In this document: positions 53,349 through 59,480 of the stretch, piece after piece | Numbering within the stretch: the stretch's first letter is position 1 | Layout of the letters: every line of letters begins with the position of its first letter | Source: Auanema rhodensis | Taxonomy: Eukaryota; Animalia; Nematoda | Direction of reading: 5' to 3' | Assembly (NCBI GenBank): GCA_964057225.1 | Contig: OZ059894.1 | Location: 6,200,001 to 6,264,000, forward strand | DNA length: 64,000 nucleotides | Made by a program: the position numbers and the translations under genes | Notes under the pieces: generated by a model | What the model was told of the DNA's origin: nothing | Databases searched by the model: none | Seen by the model: only the letters and a program-made list of their open reading frames with translations

Positions 53349-53519
53349 TTTATGAATCATGAACAGTAGTGCTGTAGGAAATATTTCATTTGTCATATTT
53401 TTATTTTAAATATGATTAAAATATGTACAAAATGGAAGATATTTAATTGGAAGACGTAGCATATATTATATGGTTTTCCATTATATTCCCTGTTTAAAAC
53501 ATGAGGCTTCTGTATTTCA

Positions 53520-56500
53520 TCATAATATTGCTTTTACCGGATTTTCTCTGGCAGTAACACTTTTCTTATAATCTGAGTATATTCCAATCGGAGCTGTTGA
53601 TCGGGAACTTCGTGGCGTGACACTTCGTTGATCGGGTGTTGTTGGCAAGCTTTCAAAAGCGATCGGAGGAGTCTCAACTGATGAAAATAGTTTTTTCCTA
53701 AACATATTATGGTAACATACTTTTTCTTTCTTTAATGATGGATTGCAGTGGTGGTGGACTGTTTTCACCTTCTATACGACTTATTAACCAGAAAGTCTCC
53801 ATGACCCCTTTTCCCTAAAAGCTCTAGGTTGAAAACATCATCATGTCTCTAAGGGATACCTTAATAATAACTTCACCCCGACTTTCTGTACGAAAACCTC
53901 CTATTACTTCAGTTATCATATGATGAGCTTCCGATGAAAGATGAATATGACCAGCTATTAACAAAGAAAACATTTTCCTCATATTATTAAAGACTTACAT
54001 TTTCCATTACTCTCCATTCTACTAGCTGTATTTACAGTATCTCCGAACAAACAATATCTGGGCATAGTTAATCCGACAACTCCTGCCACTACAGAACCTG
54101 CAAATAATTGTTTTCTTTATCTTCGAACTAATATATTAGAACCTGAATGAACTCCGATACGAAGATTTATTCGCTCAGAAGGCATATGTGAAATTCTGAA
54201 ATCTCTAACTCCAGCCATGAAAGCTAAAGAAAGATTAGCAATAGCCCGAGCATGCTCATTTCCGTTCCGATGTGGAAGACCGGAAACACATAAATATCCA
54301 TCACCAATAGTTTCAACCTAATTTCAAATATTATGAAACAGTTATAAGATTATATAATACCTTATAAACATCACTTTGTTCAATTATATTGTCTAATATA
54401 TTATATAAATCATTAAGAAGTGTTACAACCTGAAAATCGGATTCTTTTCTTCAACTAATAGGTGCAAATACCTGTAGTGGTGTAGATTTACTAGCTAATA
54501 TTGTGAACTGAACAACATCAGAGAAAAATACTGTAACACTGTCAAAGGTTTCAGGTTGAACTGCTTGTCCTAGTTTCAACTTTTCAGCTACTTGCCTAAA
54601 TTCAAATTCATATAAGTCTTTGGAATAAAAAAGAATTTTACCTCGGTAACATTCTATATAATAAAACATCTGATTTTTTCTTTTCTTCAACCAATTCTTT
54701 TGTTCTAGATGTAACTTCTTCTTCTAATGTAGCTGCATATGTTTCCATTATATTGAAAACATGATCCATTAAGTTATCATTTCTATAAAAAACTAACAAT
54801 AATAATGAAAAGATCTTTTTTTTGCCTTCCACTATGAAGAGATTTTAATAAATTTCTGATCTGATCTAATGATGGTCGTTTTTCTGGATCCTGACCCCAA
54901 CAATCCCGAATAAGTTCAAGCTAAATTCAATCGTTGTCAACTAAAAACAATAAAAGAAACTACTCACTAGTCCTGGATTTATGTCAATACTTTCATGTAC
55001 TGTTAATTCTGGACGAGGTGGTTGCCCCCTATCACGTTTAAGCCAATAAATAATAGCTGAAATGGGATTAAATTTTTCTGATAATGGTTAAAATATAAAC
55101 TTTCGGCTGGCTCTTTTCTGTTATCTAAATCCCATGCTGGTTTTTTGCTAATTAACTCCGAACATATAATAGCAAAACTATATACATCTGACTTTTCATT
55201 GCCATGTGTCAGACCCCTGAGAACTTCTGGTGCAGTCCATAACCAATCTACATATATCTTGATTGTCAAAAATAAAGAGAAATAGAAATATTTGCCTTCA
55301 CTACTCATAGTTGTAGCTTCTCTTATTTTTTCTAATCCAAAGTATGATAATTTGACTTGAAACCTTTCGTCTACCAAACAAGTTTCAGAAGTTAAATATC
55401 CGTGATATTTGATGAATGATTTGTGAATATAGCTTAAACCCTATATGTAATATTATTATTATTGATTATATGGAAAAAAATATTTCTTACTGATATGATA
55501 TCTCTTATTAATGAAAATATAAAGAAATAGTCCATTGTTATTGATCCTTTTGTTATTACATCTTTTAAACTTCCTCTACCACAATATCTCAAATAAACAC
55601 TTAATTAGCTATGCTATATGTTTTTCTATTACTTCCAAATTGACATTAATTCTGGCCCATCTAAACACAAACCAAAAAATAAATTCAAATTATCGTGTTC
55701 AGTTTGTCTGAGCTAAAATGTATGAACGATTCTTTCAAAAGTGTCTTGCTTTATACCTGTCTTAACTCACTAGCATCATCTTCATCTGGTTTTATTTTCA
55801 TGTTGTGTTTTAAAGCTCCAACCTTATCTCCCTAACAAAGAAATTGTTAGGAATTCATGAAATATTCCTATTTTACTTACATCTAACATGTAAAACTTAT
55901 AGTGTCTTGTCTCTATTTTTGAATCAAGTGTCATCTTAGTAACAATAGATGAAGGACCACTACTAATCGATCTGCTACTCTGTTCACCCTTTGGCTAAAT
56001 ATTTTCATGAAACGTTGAAAAAAAAACATTAAAAACTACTTTTTTTTGTATAGTTTGTAATTGTGAGTAAGGAACTTGCCACATCATATTGAGCCTTTCC
56101 ATTTCTTTTCGTTTCGACCTTAATTTTAAAAATTCTTTTAAAATGAAAATAATTTTTTTGAGGTGTGTTTTTCATTCATTGTAAAAATAAAATCAATGAA
56201 CTAAAGTTCAATGTCTGCAACTTTTCTCACCTTATAGTATAAAAAACTCCTGAAATTGCTGCTGCAATTGCAAAGAAGATAAGAACACCAGCTATGATTA
56301 CCCAAACTAGATAGTTGGAAACAAAATCAACTGGACACTAAATGAATATATTGCATTCATTTCATGAAAAATTCATAATTGGTACGTTATCTCCTTTGAA
56401 GCCACATATTGGCACCACAAGAGGTGGACCTTTATTTTCACGATTAACGAAAACTTCGGCAACACTGGTGTAGTGTGGAGTAAAATTCTGAATTTCATAT

Positions 56501-57611
56501 AGATGGAAACCTTCAGAAGAAAAAAACGTACAGATGCATATCCGTTGACATAGACAGCACCATATTCTTCTGGTGAACCTTGACGATTTAAGGCTCGTAG
56601 AAAAAATGTAACAACTCGTGAGCTGTTTTCATTAAATTGAATCTTACCGGAAACACCTAACAAAATATTCTCTAGATAATGTAGTAAATAAGCAAGTAAC
56701 ACCTTGAAATTCAACTTGAGAATATGACATGATAAGTTTGCCATCGTCAACTAATTCAGATAAAGGCATCGTTGGATTTGCTTTAACTGTTGCATTGATC
56801 ATGTAAGCAAGCATGAGAACAGCATCGTGCAACTGTCCAGCATACATAGATACCTGAAGTTATATTTCTTGAATTCAGTTTCCCCTATGCCTCAAAATAT
56901 CAAAGTTTACTTACACGTGTACGATTAAAACAATCAGTAGTACAGTAAAAAGGTTTCAATGCCATCCGTCTAATGACATCTTCTCCAAATTTTTCATATT
57001 CGGCAGAAACTTCACCTCCTGTCATTGCAATCTGTAAAATGTTTCAAATTTATAAAAAACTTTATACGTTTTCAACATCAGTAATAGCAAGAGTATATTT
57101 GAAAGCCTCTCTAGCATCTTCATCCCTCCCATCGTCAAGATCAGATTCCCATGCGAAGTGTTCCGTTCCATCTGGTCGTGTAATAACTAATATACATAAA
57201 TATGTATATAATAAAAACAATATTAAAAATAACAAACCATATCCTTTGCTTTTTGTATCAGCAAAAATATATAGATATTCATCATTAGCATATCCATTGT
57301 CATAAGCTGATAACATAAATTGTCTTTTCAACTCATATCCTTCCGCAAAGCATACAACAAATACTGTAAAATAATTATTCAGTTTAAAATATTTTGGAAA
57401 ATTAATTCTTAATCGTGAACTGTTATTAATATGAATATCATACTATCCATCTAATGTGCATATAATTAATTTTACATCAAATCAAATATTATTAATATGA
57501 ATACAAAGTGCATATACTAACTCATAGTTTGTATGTTTATTAATTCATCAGGCATAACCTATATAATCTAATTCAAAGCATGTTAATTATAATCAATATA
57601 TGTCTATATAT

Positions 57612-57644
<33 letters not shown>

Positions 57645-59181
57645 ATAATGACATACACTTATGAACTAAAAATATTAAATAAAAATTATACAAAGTATAG
57701 TATAAGTTTTATATTTGTTTCATAGTTTTATCTCCAAGTTTTGTGTTTAGATCATAATTTTTAGAATATAAATGTATGCATGTATGTATATAATACAAAT
57801 ATCATTGAATTGAATGTTTTGTTTATGTATACATTCAAGTTCTTTGAACGTGAAATGACTTACTACGTGCACGCTGATGAGCTGTATACAGTGTTGATTT
57901 AAATTGTTCCATGGTGGCATTTGTTATTTCGATTATAAGTGAAATATCCACGAAATCAGACATGCTCGTAACACTCTAGAAAAACTCACTTCGTGCTCTT
58001 TGACTTGCATTTCGTAACGAATTTAAGAGTCCTTCAGTGCTAACATCTAATATCTCCATCGTGAACGATATTGTTATATGTGAAAGTAATGAAATAGCGG
58101 ACTGTAAAATATTTTTCGAAAGCTGCGGTCCAGTTGATCTTTCTATTTCATCTCAATGTGGTTTATGAAGATTTTTGTTAGCCTTTTGATTTAATATTGC
58201 TCCTAGATGATACCTGTAGTGCTGTTTTCATATCTTCACATTTTTCCTTGTCCATATAATTAGAATAAACATAAGCAAATTCAGATAAGTTATACTCCAA
58301 TAGCACTCGTCGAATAGCAACAGATAAGCTGAGAAATAATGATTAAACACTCTTATCTTTCTTTTATCTTTATATGAACCTTAGTGAGCTGGCAGCTACA
58401 CTAGCTATAGTTGGAAATCGTACTCGATCATTCAAACGATGAGCTGTGGATAATCCCCAAGTAATAATGGGAGTATTATAATATTTTCCGAAAACACCCG
58501 CAACATCGGCAGCTGTAGAAAAGATAGGATTCATAAAGACATTAGTACAAGGTTTATGAAAATAAAGATTGGCAGATTTCAGCATATTAGATGTACCTGA
58601 GCTACATACGGGCCCTATTATTGCTGCCAGATCTACATGTCGTTGAAGAAGCAAAGATTCTCCGGCCATCTGATCTCCTTGACATTCATCAAATGCTATT
58701 GTATAACTAAAATAAGATAAGATATCTGTAAAACTCTATAAATTATGTGCATACTTTATAGTGAATTTGGATAAGATTCCTTCTCTTTCTATTTTATCTC
58801 TTGCGATTATAGCTGCGGAAGCTGATGTTTCATAGCCTACTGTATCCATCATAGTTGTAATATTTCTTACCATAAACAATGCAACTTCCAAGGGTAAAGT
58901 ACCAGGTCGTATTGGATTTTGAGCAAAAGATATCTGGAACAATTTGTCAACTGGCGATTCAACGAAAAAACTATTAATTTTCAAAAACTAATTTTAACAA
59001 TGTGTTACACTTCACGTGCAACACGTGAAAGAAAGGTTATTTTCTATTTGATGGGCGTACATACGGTTGTCAATTCTCAAAGAGACAATCATCAAAAACT
59101 ATTATATATTATAAATAAATTTTAAAAGTTGAAACTTACAGAAACTAATAGTAGACCTAGCCATACTTGAGATGGATTCAT
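53520..59181 (-). CDS. Receptor-type guanylyl cyclase (gcy family)
   Basis: Signal peptide [21 protein letters not shown]-receptor ectodomain [44 protein letters not shown]. Kinase-homology [23 protein letters not shown] and LWTAPE. Cyclase [36 protein letters not shown]. Confidence 0.95.
57621..57643. repeat. (TA)n microsatellite in a gcy intron
   Basis: Direct reading; preceded by a short (CA)n. Confidence 0.85.
57864..57975 (-). CDS. gcy alternative ectodomain exon B
   Basis: Acceptor tttttctag, 112 nt, donor gtaagt; encodes [37 protein letters not shown]. Confidence 0.85.
57990..58101 (-). CDS. gcy alternative ectodomain exon A
   Basis: Acceptor ttttacag, 112 nt, donor gtgagt; encodes [37 protein letters not shown]. 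Confidence 0.85.
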
Positions 59182-59480
59182 TGTCACGAAGCAATGAGCT
59201 AAAAACTGTTAACTAGGATAGACTTTGCTATATTATGATAATGAAGGGCTTCTTGAACTAGTTATTACTACTGTATTATGGTTGTGGAGCTTCCCATTGA
59301 GGGCGCAAATCCCTTTTATGAGAAAATCGAACACTATTACATTGTTTTTAATTCAATCTTGTAATCGTTAACAATAATGTTATTCACTACCTTAATACTA
59401 TACATGGCTTTCAGGTTGTATTATATTTTGAAATAAACATCACATAGAAAAACAATAATTTAATATATTAAAACTCGTTT

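What the first reader, a model, noticed from the sequence alone, without database searches (positions are those of the whole stretch)
57864..58101. Sterically enforced mutually exclusive exon pair that swaps part of a receptor guanylyl cyclase ectodomain
Seen: two tandem exons (A 58101-57990, B 57975-57864), each exactly 112 nt, phase 0 in and phase 1 out, with canonical acceptor and donor and an open frame. They align without gaps (13/37 identical, both ending QRAR) between ...[10 protein letters not shown] and IFVVCFAEG.... They are separated by only 14 nt (gtgagtttttctag), far shorter than the other introns here. Splicing both shifts the frame (224 nt). Retaining the spacer keeps phase but reads S-E-F-F-TAG, with the stop formed by exon B's own acceptor. 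Each exon carries a different N-glycosylation sequon (NAS vs NAT). Established: nematode receptor GCs act in sensory neurons, and their ectodomains can set stimulus specificity. Inference: one locus makes two receptors with different ectodomain segments, diversifying by exon duplication rather than gene duplication. About 65% divergence with no indels or stops suggests both exons are under selection. I do not know of this arrangement in C. elegans gcy genes but cannot check.
Basis: partly seen in the sequence, partly recalled or inferred. Interest (0 to 1): 0.88.

Follow-up and report, generated by a model that had tools for sequence, protein, structure and literature searches.

The report
Twin alternative exons in worm receptor
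A nematode sensory-type receptor gene carries two diverged copies of one small exon only 14 bases apart, so a usable message can hold only one; this probably gives two receptor versions from one gene, a layout known from other worm receptors, but use of both copies was not shown.

Summary
On the minus strand, two 112-nt exons (58101-57990 and 57975-57864) lie 14 nt apart. Both are phase 0 in and phase 1 out, with good splice sites. They sit inside a transcribed receptor guanylyl cyclase gene.

- **Homology:** the peptides are homologous (13/37 identical; 0 of 100,000 shuffles reach their score), while the DNA similarity is erased.
- **Constraint:** the divergence looks selected, not random. 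Exon B keeps its frame, length, exon-like GC and strand-core residues.
- **Exclusivity:** including both, neither, or the spacer gives early stop codons. RNA-verified introns in this gene are 43 nt or longer.
- **Precedent:** C. elegans egl-15 exons 5B/5A are also 14 nt apart, also lie in a receptor ectodomain, and set ligand specificity. So this is a new member of a known kind.
- **Location:** the cassette is the least conserved ectodomain exon of the family. It aligns to the ANP-receptor segment holding hormone contacts His185, Glu187 and His195.

Not shown: no RNA contig covered the pair, and no sister genome could be reached. Seven related genes in six other species carry a single copy. 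The scan has noted other exclusive exon pairs in this genome, but none in this gene.

The parts
53510..59181 (-). Receptor guanylyl cyclase gene. The predicted start codon is at 59181. RNA contigs reach down to 53510.
   Evidence: Pfam finds ANF_receptor, kinase-homology and Guanylate_cyc in stop-free pieces. Spliced contigs at 99% identity or more show GT-AG joints.
58214..58328 (-). Exon 5, the common upstream exon. It ends ...[10 protein letters not shown] in phase 0 and holds Cys185.
   Evidence: Sequence and translation. The Cys aligns to Cys164 of the rat ANP receptor.
58102..58213 (-). Intron between exon 5 and exon A, 112 nt, GTATCA...TTTTACAG.
   Evidence: This intron is predicted; no RNA contig covers it.
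57990..58101 (-). Exon 6A, 112 nt. It is the copy closer to the homologues and keeps the family's conserved N-x-S sequon just before RAR.
   Evidence: It shares 14-16 of 37 residues with strongylid exon 6. It scores 28.3 bits against a family exon-6 profile.
57976..57989 (-). 14-nt spacer GTGAGTTTTTCTAG: the donor of A abutting the acceptor of B. If retained it gives an in-frame TAG.
   Evidence: It is far below the 43-nt smallest RNA-verified intron and below the roughly 40-nt minimum reported for C. elegans.
57864..57975 (-). Exon 6B, 112 nt, the diverged copy. It lacks the conserved sequon and instead has NAT in the loop between strand and helix.
   Evidence: It scores 14.2 bits over the full length of the family profile, second best of all ORF pieces in the window. 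Its GC is 37.5%, against 24% for introns.
57364..57863 (-). Intron between exon B and exon 7, 500 nt, 19.8% GC, with a TA/TG microsatellite. It holds no third exon copy.
57238..57363 (-). Exon 7, the common downstream exon. It starts (a)ta = I, then FVVCFAEG, and holds Cys235.
   Evidence: An RNA contig (X1 record 5) covers 57238-57363 and is joined to 57186. The Cys aligns to Cys213 of the ANP receptor.

Best explanation
An old tandem duplication of a 126-bp unit (acceptor, exon 6, donor) left two homologous exons in a receptor guanylyl cyclase gene. Their only separation is the donor of A joined to the acceptor of B.

**How exclusivity works (inferred)**
- A 14-nt interval cannot be removed as an intron.
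- Factors binding the donor of A and the acceptor of B probably cannot both sit there, so defining one exon shuts out the other.
- Any message with both exons plus the spacer, or with neither exon, meets an early stop and is expected to be degraded.
- Only messages with exactly one copy encode a receptor.

**What differs between the two products**
- They differ in 24 of 37 residues.
- The segment is one strand-loop-helix unit in the second lobe of the ligand-binding domain.
- It lies inside a conserved disulfide loop.
- The buried strand residues are kept. The loop, the helix surface and the glycosylation site differ.

**Shown:** the anatomy, the homology, the frame logic, transcription of the gene, the constrained divergence and the structural position.

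**Inferred:** that both exons are used, that a regulated switch chooses between them, and that the two receptors differ in what they sense or in their partners.
For: - **Anatomy and frames:**
- **Homology:** 0 of 100,000 shuffles reach the score.
- **Constraint:** if 65 of 112 nt are changed at random, mean amino-acid identity is 5.7/37 against 13 observed. BLOSUM 52 or more occurs in 0 of 50,000 trials, and the frame stays open in only 8.5%. Synonymous sites are saturated.
- **Composition:** exon B has exon-like GC, 0.375, against 0.243 for introns.
- **Family match:** A and B are the two best matches in the whole window to a profile built only from homologues.
- **Intron sizes:** RNA-verified introns are 43 nt or longer.
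- **Precedent:** egl-15 5B/5A has a 14-nt spacer and let-2 9/10 a 30-nt one; bet-2, gly-5 and gly-6 are similar. These short introns were never seen excised. egl-15 exon choice sets ligand specificity.
- **Variability:** exon 6 is the least conserved ectodomain exon in the family, 0.45 against 0.49-0.65.
- **Structure:** in a model of a homologue (pLDDT 90) it forms one strand-loop-helix unit.
- **Ligand site:** it aligns to ANP-receptor residues 173-208 between Cys164 and Cys213. That stretch includes the hormone contacts His185, Glu187 and His195.
Against: - No RNA contig covers either exon or their junctions. The one contig that crosses into exon 6 shows only six unlisted letters.
- Exon B matches the family profile weakly, 14 bits against 28 for A, and has lost a conserved glycosylation sequon.
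- Seven related genes at six loci, from six other species, have a single copy. Their annotated isoforms never differ in this exon.
- No sister-species locus could be examined.
- The signs of constraint would also remain if B fell out of use only recently.
Confidence: 0.68

Rival explanations
1. Only exon A is used. Exon B is an unused or very rarely used duplicate. It may be a recently silenced former alternative exon, or a decoy whose use is negligible.
For: - A resembles strongylid exon 6 (14-16/37 identical, scores 59-72) more than B does (8-12/37, scores 26-46).
- B scores only 14.2 bits against the family profile.
- B lacks the conserved N-x-S sequon before RAR.
- No RNA evidence exists for B.
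- Related genes manage with a single exon.
Against: - B keeps its frame, its exact length, a consensus acceptor and a perfect GTAAGT donor, although DNA similarity to A has eroded completely.
- Random decay to the same nucleotide divergence never reproduced the protein similarity.
- B's GC is exon-like while the adjoining intron is 19.8% GC.
- The strand-core residues are kept, and the differences fall on the loop and the helix surface.
Confidence: 0.24
2. A different splicing pattern joins parts of both copies. For example, a cryptic GTT donor inside exon A (after codon 19) could be spliced to the acceptor of exon B, keeping the frame and adding 19 residues.
For: - GAT|GTTAGC inside exon A lies in phase 0 and would leave an intron of about 69 nt (reading).
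- GTT donors are used in this gene, for example the RNA-verified GTTTGT at 57237.
Against: - The product would duplicate a beta strand within a compact lobe.
- The candidate donor is weak next to the GTGAGT at the end of A.
- No RNA evidence supports it.
Confidence: 0.05
3. The tandem pair is an assembly or sequencing artefact.
For: Nothing beyond the tandem layout itself. One homologue in the database (Ostertagia, P0013) does show an exact 70-residue repeat that looks like such an artefact.
Against: The two copies share 47 of 112 nt and have no blastn match to each other. Artefactual duplications are near-identical.
Confidence: 0.01

Closest known systems
[quoted passage not shown]
   Same: - Two adjacent alternative exons lie in the ectodomain of a single-pass receptor.
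- They are separated by exactly 14 nt.
- That short intron was never seen excised.
- The choice of exon sets ligand specificity.
   Different: - egl-15 is a receptor tyrosine kinase, not a guanylyl cyclase.
- Its exons are multiples of three. Here each exon is 3n+1, so frame and decay add a second safeguard.
- Regulators are known for egl-15 (ASD-1/FOX-1, SUP-12); none is known here.
- Use of both exons is proven for egl-15 and not here.
Other C. elegans short-intron exclusive clusters: let-2 9/10 (30 nt), bet-2 3a/3b, gly-5 9b/9c, gly-6 8a/8b
   Same: The intervening intron is below the roughly 40-nt minimum, which physically prevents double inclusion.
   Different: All five C. elegans clusters have exon lengths that are multiples of three. 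None lies in a guanylyl cyclase.
Frame- and NMD-dependent exclusive clusters in C. elegans (19 clusters with exons not 3n)
   Same: Double inclusion or double skipping shifts the frame and creates early stops.
   Different: Those clusters have normal-sized intervening introns. Here the steric block and the frame block act together.
Mammalian ANP receptor (NPR-A) hormone-binding domain
   Same: - It has the same fold (phmmer E 7e-11).
- The swapped segment aligns to residues 173-208, between the Cys164-Cys213 pair.
- That stretch holds the hormone-contacting His185, Glu187 and His195.
   Different: - The alignment is a low-identity one.
- The nematode receptor's stimulus is unknown.
- I found no report of an exclusive exon pair there.

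Membership tests
Receptor guanylyl cyclase | Extracellular ANF_receptor (periplasmic-binding-protein type I) domain | tested here: met
   PF01094 hits on stop-free pieces: 29.9 bits for one piece and 19.9 bits (below the curated cut-off) for another. Match to solved ANP-receptor ectodomains, E 7e-11, via homologue P0040.
Receptor guanylyl cyclase | Single transmembrane helix after the ectodomain | tested here: met
   Exon 13 encodes a hydrophobic run, [23 protein letters not shown], followed by basic residues. This was read directly; no predictor was run.
Receptor guanylyl cyclase | Kinase-homology domain followed by a class III cyclase domain | tested here: met
   PF07714/PF00069 at 42.5 and 39.3 bits. 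PF00211 at 50.3, 54.0 and 23.9 bits on three pieces.
Receptor guanylyl cyclase | cGMP synthesis regulated through the ectodomain | not testable with these tools
   This needs biochemistry.
Homologous mutually exclusive exon cluster | Adjacent exons that are homologous, with the same length and the same phases, each with its own splice sites | tested here: met
Homologous mutually exclusive exon cluster | Mature mRNAs contain exactly one of the exons, and each exon is seen in some mRNAs | tested here: inconclusive
   Three small RNA runs were laid on the gene. Contigs cover 53510-57363 in patches and nothing from 57364 to 59200.
Homologous mutually exclusive exon cluster | The downstream frame is preserved whichever exon is chosen; double inclusion or double skipping is unproductive | tested here: met
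   Translations of the A, B, A+B and neither forms.
Steric-interference class (egl-15 / let-2 type) | Intervening intron shorter than the minimal excisable intron | tested here: met
   The spacer is 14 nt. The smallest RNA-verified intron in this gene is 43 nt. The minimum reported for C. elegans is about 40 nt.
Steric-interference class (egl-15 / let-2 type) | Exon lengths are multiples of three, as in all five C. elegans cases | tested here: not met
   Both exons are 112 nt (3n+1). This is a descriptive regularity of the known cases rather than a requirement. Here the frame adds a second block.

The most novel reading that the evidence does not exclude
One sensory receptor cyclase gene makes two receptors with different stimulus or partner specificity. 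It does so by a binary splice switch that swaps the most variable part of the ligand-binding domain, which by homology contacts the ligand. The switch is possibly set differently in different sensory neurons. This would be a substitute for the gene duplication that otherwise diversifies this large nematode family.
Probability: 0.3. Interest if true: 0.65.

Novelty: new member of a known kind. Interest (0 to 1): 0.42.

Why it matters
Nematodes sense salts, gases, temperature and peptides with dozens of receptor cyclases, and these are thought to diversify by gene duplication. A swap-exon inside the ligand-binding domain would be a second route to that diversity. It would also mark, within a 37-residue cassette, where specificity may lie in a family whose stimulus-binding sites are still poorly mapped. 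Its layout copies that of egl-15. The two-colour splicing reporters and isoform-specific mutants developed for egl-15 could therefore be applied directly. I found no report of such an exon pair in a receptor cyclase: a catalogue of C. elegans exclusive exons lists no gcy gene, and a review of these receptors in sensory processing mentions no isoforms.

Tried and rejected
- **RNA junction test.** Only three small runs of this organism were offered. Their contigs stop at 57363. One contig runs six letters into exon 6, but those letters were not shown.
- **Search for the window's own protein or a sister species.** All searches were blank or returned only distant homologues (48% identity or less): representative search, profile of window exons on a homologue scaffold, profile of the two exon ORFs, and exact look-up of a neighbouring ORF.
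- **Annotated isoforms of homologues.** Those of A. ceylanicum, H. contortus, S. hermaphroditum, C. japonica and P. redivivus differ elsewhere (exon 7 skipping, N-termini), never in exon 6.
- **Tandem repeat in Ostertagia protein P0013.** It is an exact copy and was set aside as an artefact.
- **A third exon copy in the flanking introns.** None found.
- **Competing RNA stems around the pair.** Only AT-rich, low-complexity pairs of 71-82% complementarity; none was taken further.
- **Fox-1-type GCAUG element.** One copy lies inside exon B, but the motif is at chance frequency in the window.
- **dN/dS between A and B.** Synonymous sites are saturated, so no ratio is defined.
- **One-to-one orthology.** The tree leaves the window gene in an unresolved fork on a long branch. 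The single-copy genes elsewhere are therefore not proven orthologues.
- **Folding the two window isoforms themselves.** The spliced protein has no reference to hand in, so a homologue was modelled instead.

Full report
**Observation**

Reading the minus strand and translating it confirms two 112-nt exons, A at 58101-57990 and B at 57975-57864.
- Each exon is open in only one frame.
- Each is entered in phase 0 from exon 5 (...[10 protein letters not shown], ending at 58214) and left in phase 1 into exon 7 (I-FVVCFAEG).
An RNA contig fixes that start.
- The acceptors are TTTTACAG and TTTTCTAG, and the donors are GTGAGT and GTAAGT.
- The 14-nt spacer is exactly the donor of A followed by the acceptor of B. 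The repeat period is therefore 126 nt, as expected from a minimal tandem duplication of acceptor, exon and donor.

The peptides share 13 of 37 residues without gaps. Their BLOSUM62 score of 52 was reached by none of 100,000 shuffles. At the DNA level only 47 of 112 positions agree, and blastn finds no exon-to-exon match. That rules out an assembly duplicate and shows the duplication is old.

**The gene**

Pfam finds ANF_receptor, kinase-homology and cyclase domains in stop-free pieces. Exon 13 encodes a transmembrane helix. Three small public runs of the same organism gave spliced contigs at 99% identity or more. Their joints are GT-AG (one is GC-AG), and they skip 43-51 nt, once 112 nt. So the gene is expressed, and its verified introns are at least three times longer than the spacer. 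No contig covers 57364-59200, so the decisive junctions were not observed.

**Exclusivity**

I translated the four possible forms.
- With A alone or B alone, the frame runs on into exon 7 and through the whole ectodomain.
- With A plus B, a stop comes six codons into B.
- With neither exon, a stop falls in exon 7.
- With the spacer retained, the reading is S-E-F-F-stop.

Kuroyanagi et al. 2014 (PMC4165533) put the minimal C. elegans intron at about 40 nt. They list five clusters whose intervening introns are too short to be excised. Among them is egl-15 5B/5A, at exactly 14 nt, and such short introns were never seen removed. All five have exon lengths that are multiples of three. Here the exons are 3n+1, so the frame-and-decay safeguard known from 14 other C. 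elegans clusters is added to the steric one.

**Is exon B a working exon?**

No RNA evidence could be obtained, so this rests on sequence evolution.
1. Changing 65 of 112 bases of A at random gave a mean of 5.7 identical residues, against 13 observed. It never reached the observed similarity score in 50,000 trials, and it kept the frame open in only 8.5%. Synonymous sites are saturated.
2. B has 37.5% GC, the same as the other exons (37.2%). Introns average 24.3%, and the adjoining intron is 19.8%.
3. A profile built only from exon-6 equivalents of 19 homologues picks A (28.3 bits) and B (14.2 bits, full length) as the two best of all ORF pieces in the 64-kb window.
4. In a confident model of a homologue's ectodomain (pLDDT 90.2), the cassette runs from the end of one helix through a strand, a loop and a second helix. 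A and B agree at alternate strand positions (I, S, E, I, with F/L and M/I). They differ in the loop and along the helix.

Together these points make a long-dead copy unlikely. They cannot exclude a recent loss of use.

**Comparison with relatives**

The nearest proteins available are strongylid receptor cyclases, at most 48% identical over the ectodomain. Caenorhabditis proteins are at 36-39%. One source labels a Pristionchus member gcy-7. The window's own proteome and any sister species are absent from the searchable collections.

Six fetched loci carry seven related genes, from H. placei, P. tenuis, D. viviparus, H. contortus, A. ceylanicum and C. angaria (two genes). Each gene has one exon-6 equivalent with the same boundaries. 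Annotated isoforms never differ there. A tree leaves the window gene on a long branch in an unresolved fork, so these are relatives, not proven orthologues.

Exon A is nearer to strongylid exon 6 (14-16/37) than it is to B. B is nearest to A and to one C. angaria gene. A looks like the ancestral version and B like a fast-diverged copy. A keeps the family's N-x-S sequon before RAR, while B has a NAT sequon in the loop instead.

**Where the cassette sits**

Exon 6 is the least conserved ectodomain exon in the family: mean column conservation is 0.45, against 0.49-0.65 for the others. Through a homologue, it aligns to rat ANP-receptor residues 173-208, between Cys164 and Cys213. The window protein has the matching cysteines at 185 and 235. 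In ANP-receptor crystal structures, His185, Glu187 and His195 bond to the hormone (bioRxiv 10.1101/2020.07.09.196394). The aligned window positions differ between A and B (F/L, M/I, G/Q). The alignment is of low identity, so this mapping is approximate.

Reviews state that nematode receptor cyclases detect cues through their ectodomains (PMC8045692). A review of these receptors in sensory processing mentions no isoforms (PMC5225109).

**Verdict**

- The anatomy is real and non-random.
- The most likely reading, about two in three, is a genuine exclusive exon pair giving two receptors that differ in a variable cassette which, by homology, lies next to the ligand.
- The mechanism has an exact precedent in egl-15, where exon choice sets ligand specificity (PMC2777236). 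So this is a new member of a known kind. I found no earlier report of one in a receptor cyclase.
- The main rival, about one in four, is that only A is used.
- Junction reads and a sister-species locus would settle the question.

An earlier scan note calls this an Auanema-type genome. I did not test that. The scan has noted many other exclusive exon pairs in this genome, but none in this gene.

Noticed in passing
window 54783-54825 (-): A 43-nt GC-AG intron (AAG|GCAAAA...TTATAG) in the same cyclase gene. A spliced RNA contig, X3 record 10, shows it cut out.
   Followed up: partly
window 57032-57076 (-): The exon 8 donor is ambiguous. GAT|GTTGAA gives a 45-nt intron that matches the homologues' exon boundary. 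AAC|GTATAA gives a 36-nt intron. Both keep the frame, and no RNA contig covers the site.
   Followed up: partly
window 58513-58596 and 57187-57237 (-): Two introns of this gene, 84 and 51 nt, are multiples of three with no in-frame stop. Retaining either would insert residues rather than truncate the protein.
   Followed up: no
window 57600-57660: A (TA)n/(TG)n microsatellite lies inside the unusually long (500 nt), very AT-rich intron that follows exon B. The other predicted introns of the ectodomain part are 44-206 nt.
   Followed up: no
window 57961-57965 (-): A single GCAUG (AGCAUGU) lies 10 nt into exon B. This is the core of the Fox-1 family site that regulates egl-15, but the motif is at chance frequency in the window (71 found, 82 expected).
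   Followed up: partly
P0013 (Ostertagia ostertagi KAK6032553.1), residues 202-341: This protein contains an exact 70-residue tandem repeat spanning the exon 6 equivalent and most of the exon 7 equivalent. It is probably an assembly or annotation artefact, not an exon pair.
   Followed up: partly
P0030/P0031 versus P0018/P0032 (Ancylostoma ceylanicum Y032_0211g2200): Annotated isoforms skip the 42-residue exon 7 equivalent in frame. That would delete a strand and a helix of the ligand-binding domain.
   Followed up: no
L006 1001-6044 (Caenorhabditis angaria): The gene model P0058 fuses a 7TM chemoreceptor (Srd/Srh/Srj/Str hits) to a receptor cyclase. This is likely a merged annotation. A second cyclase gene follows in tandem.
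   Followed up: no
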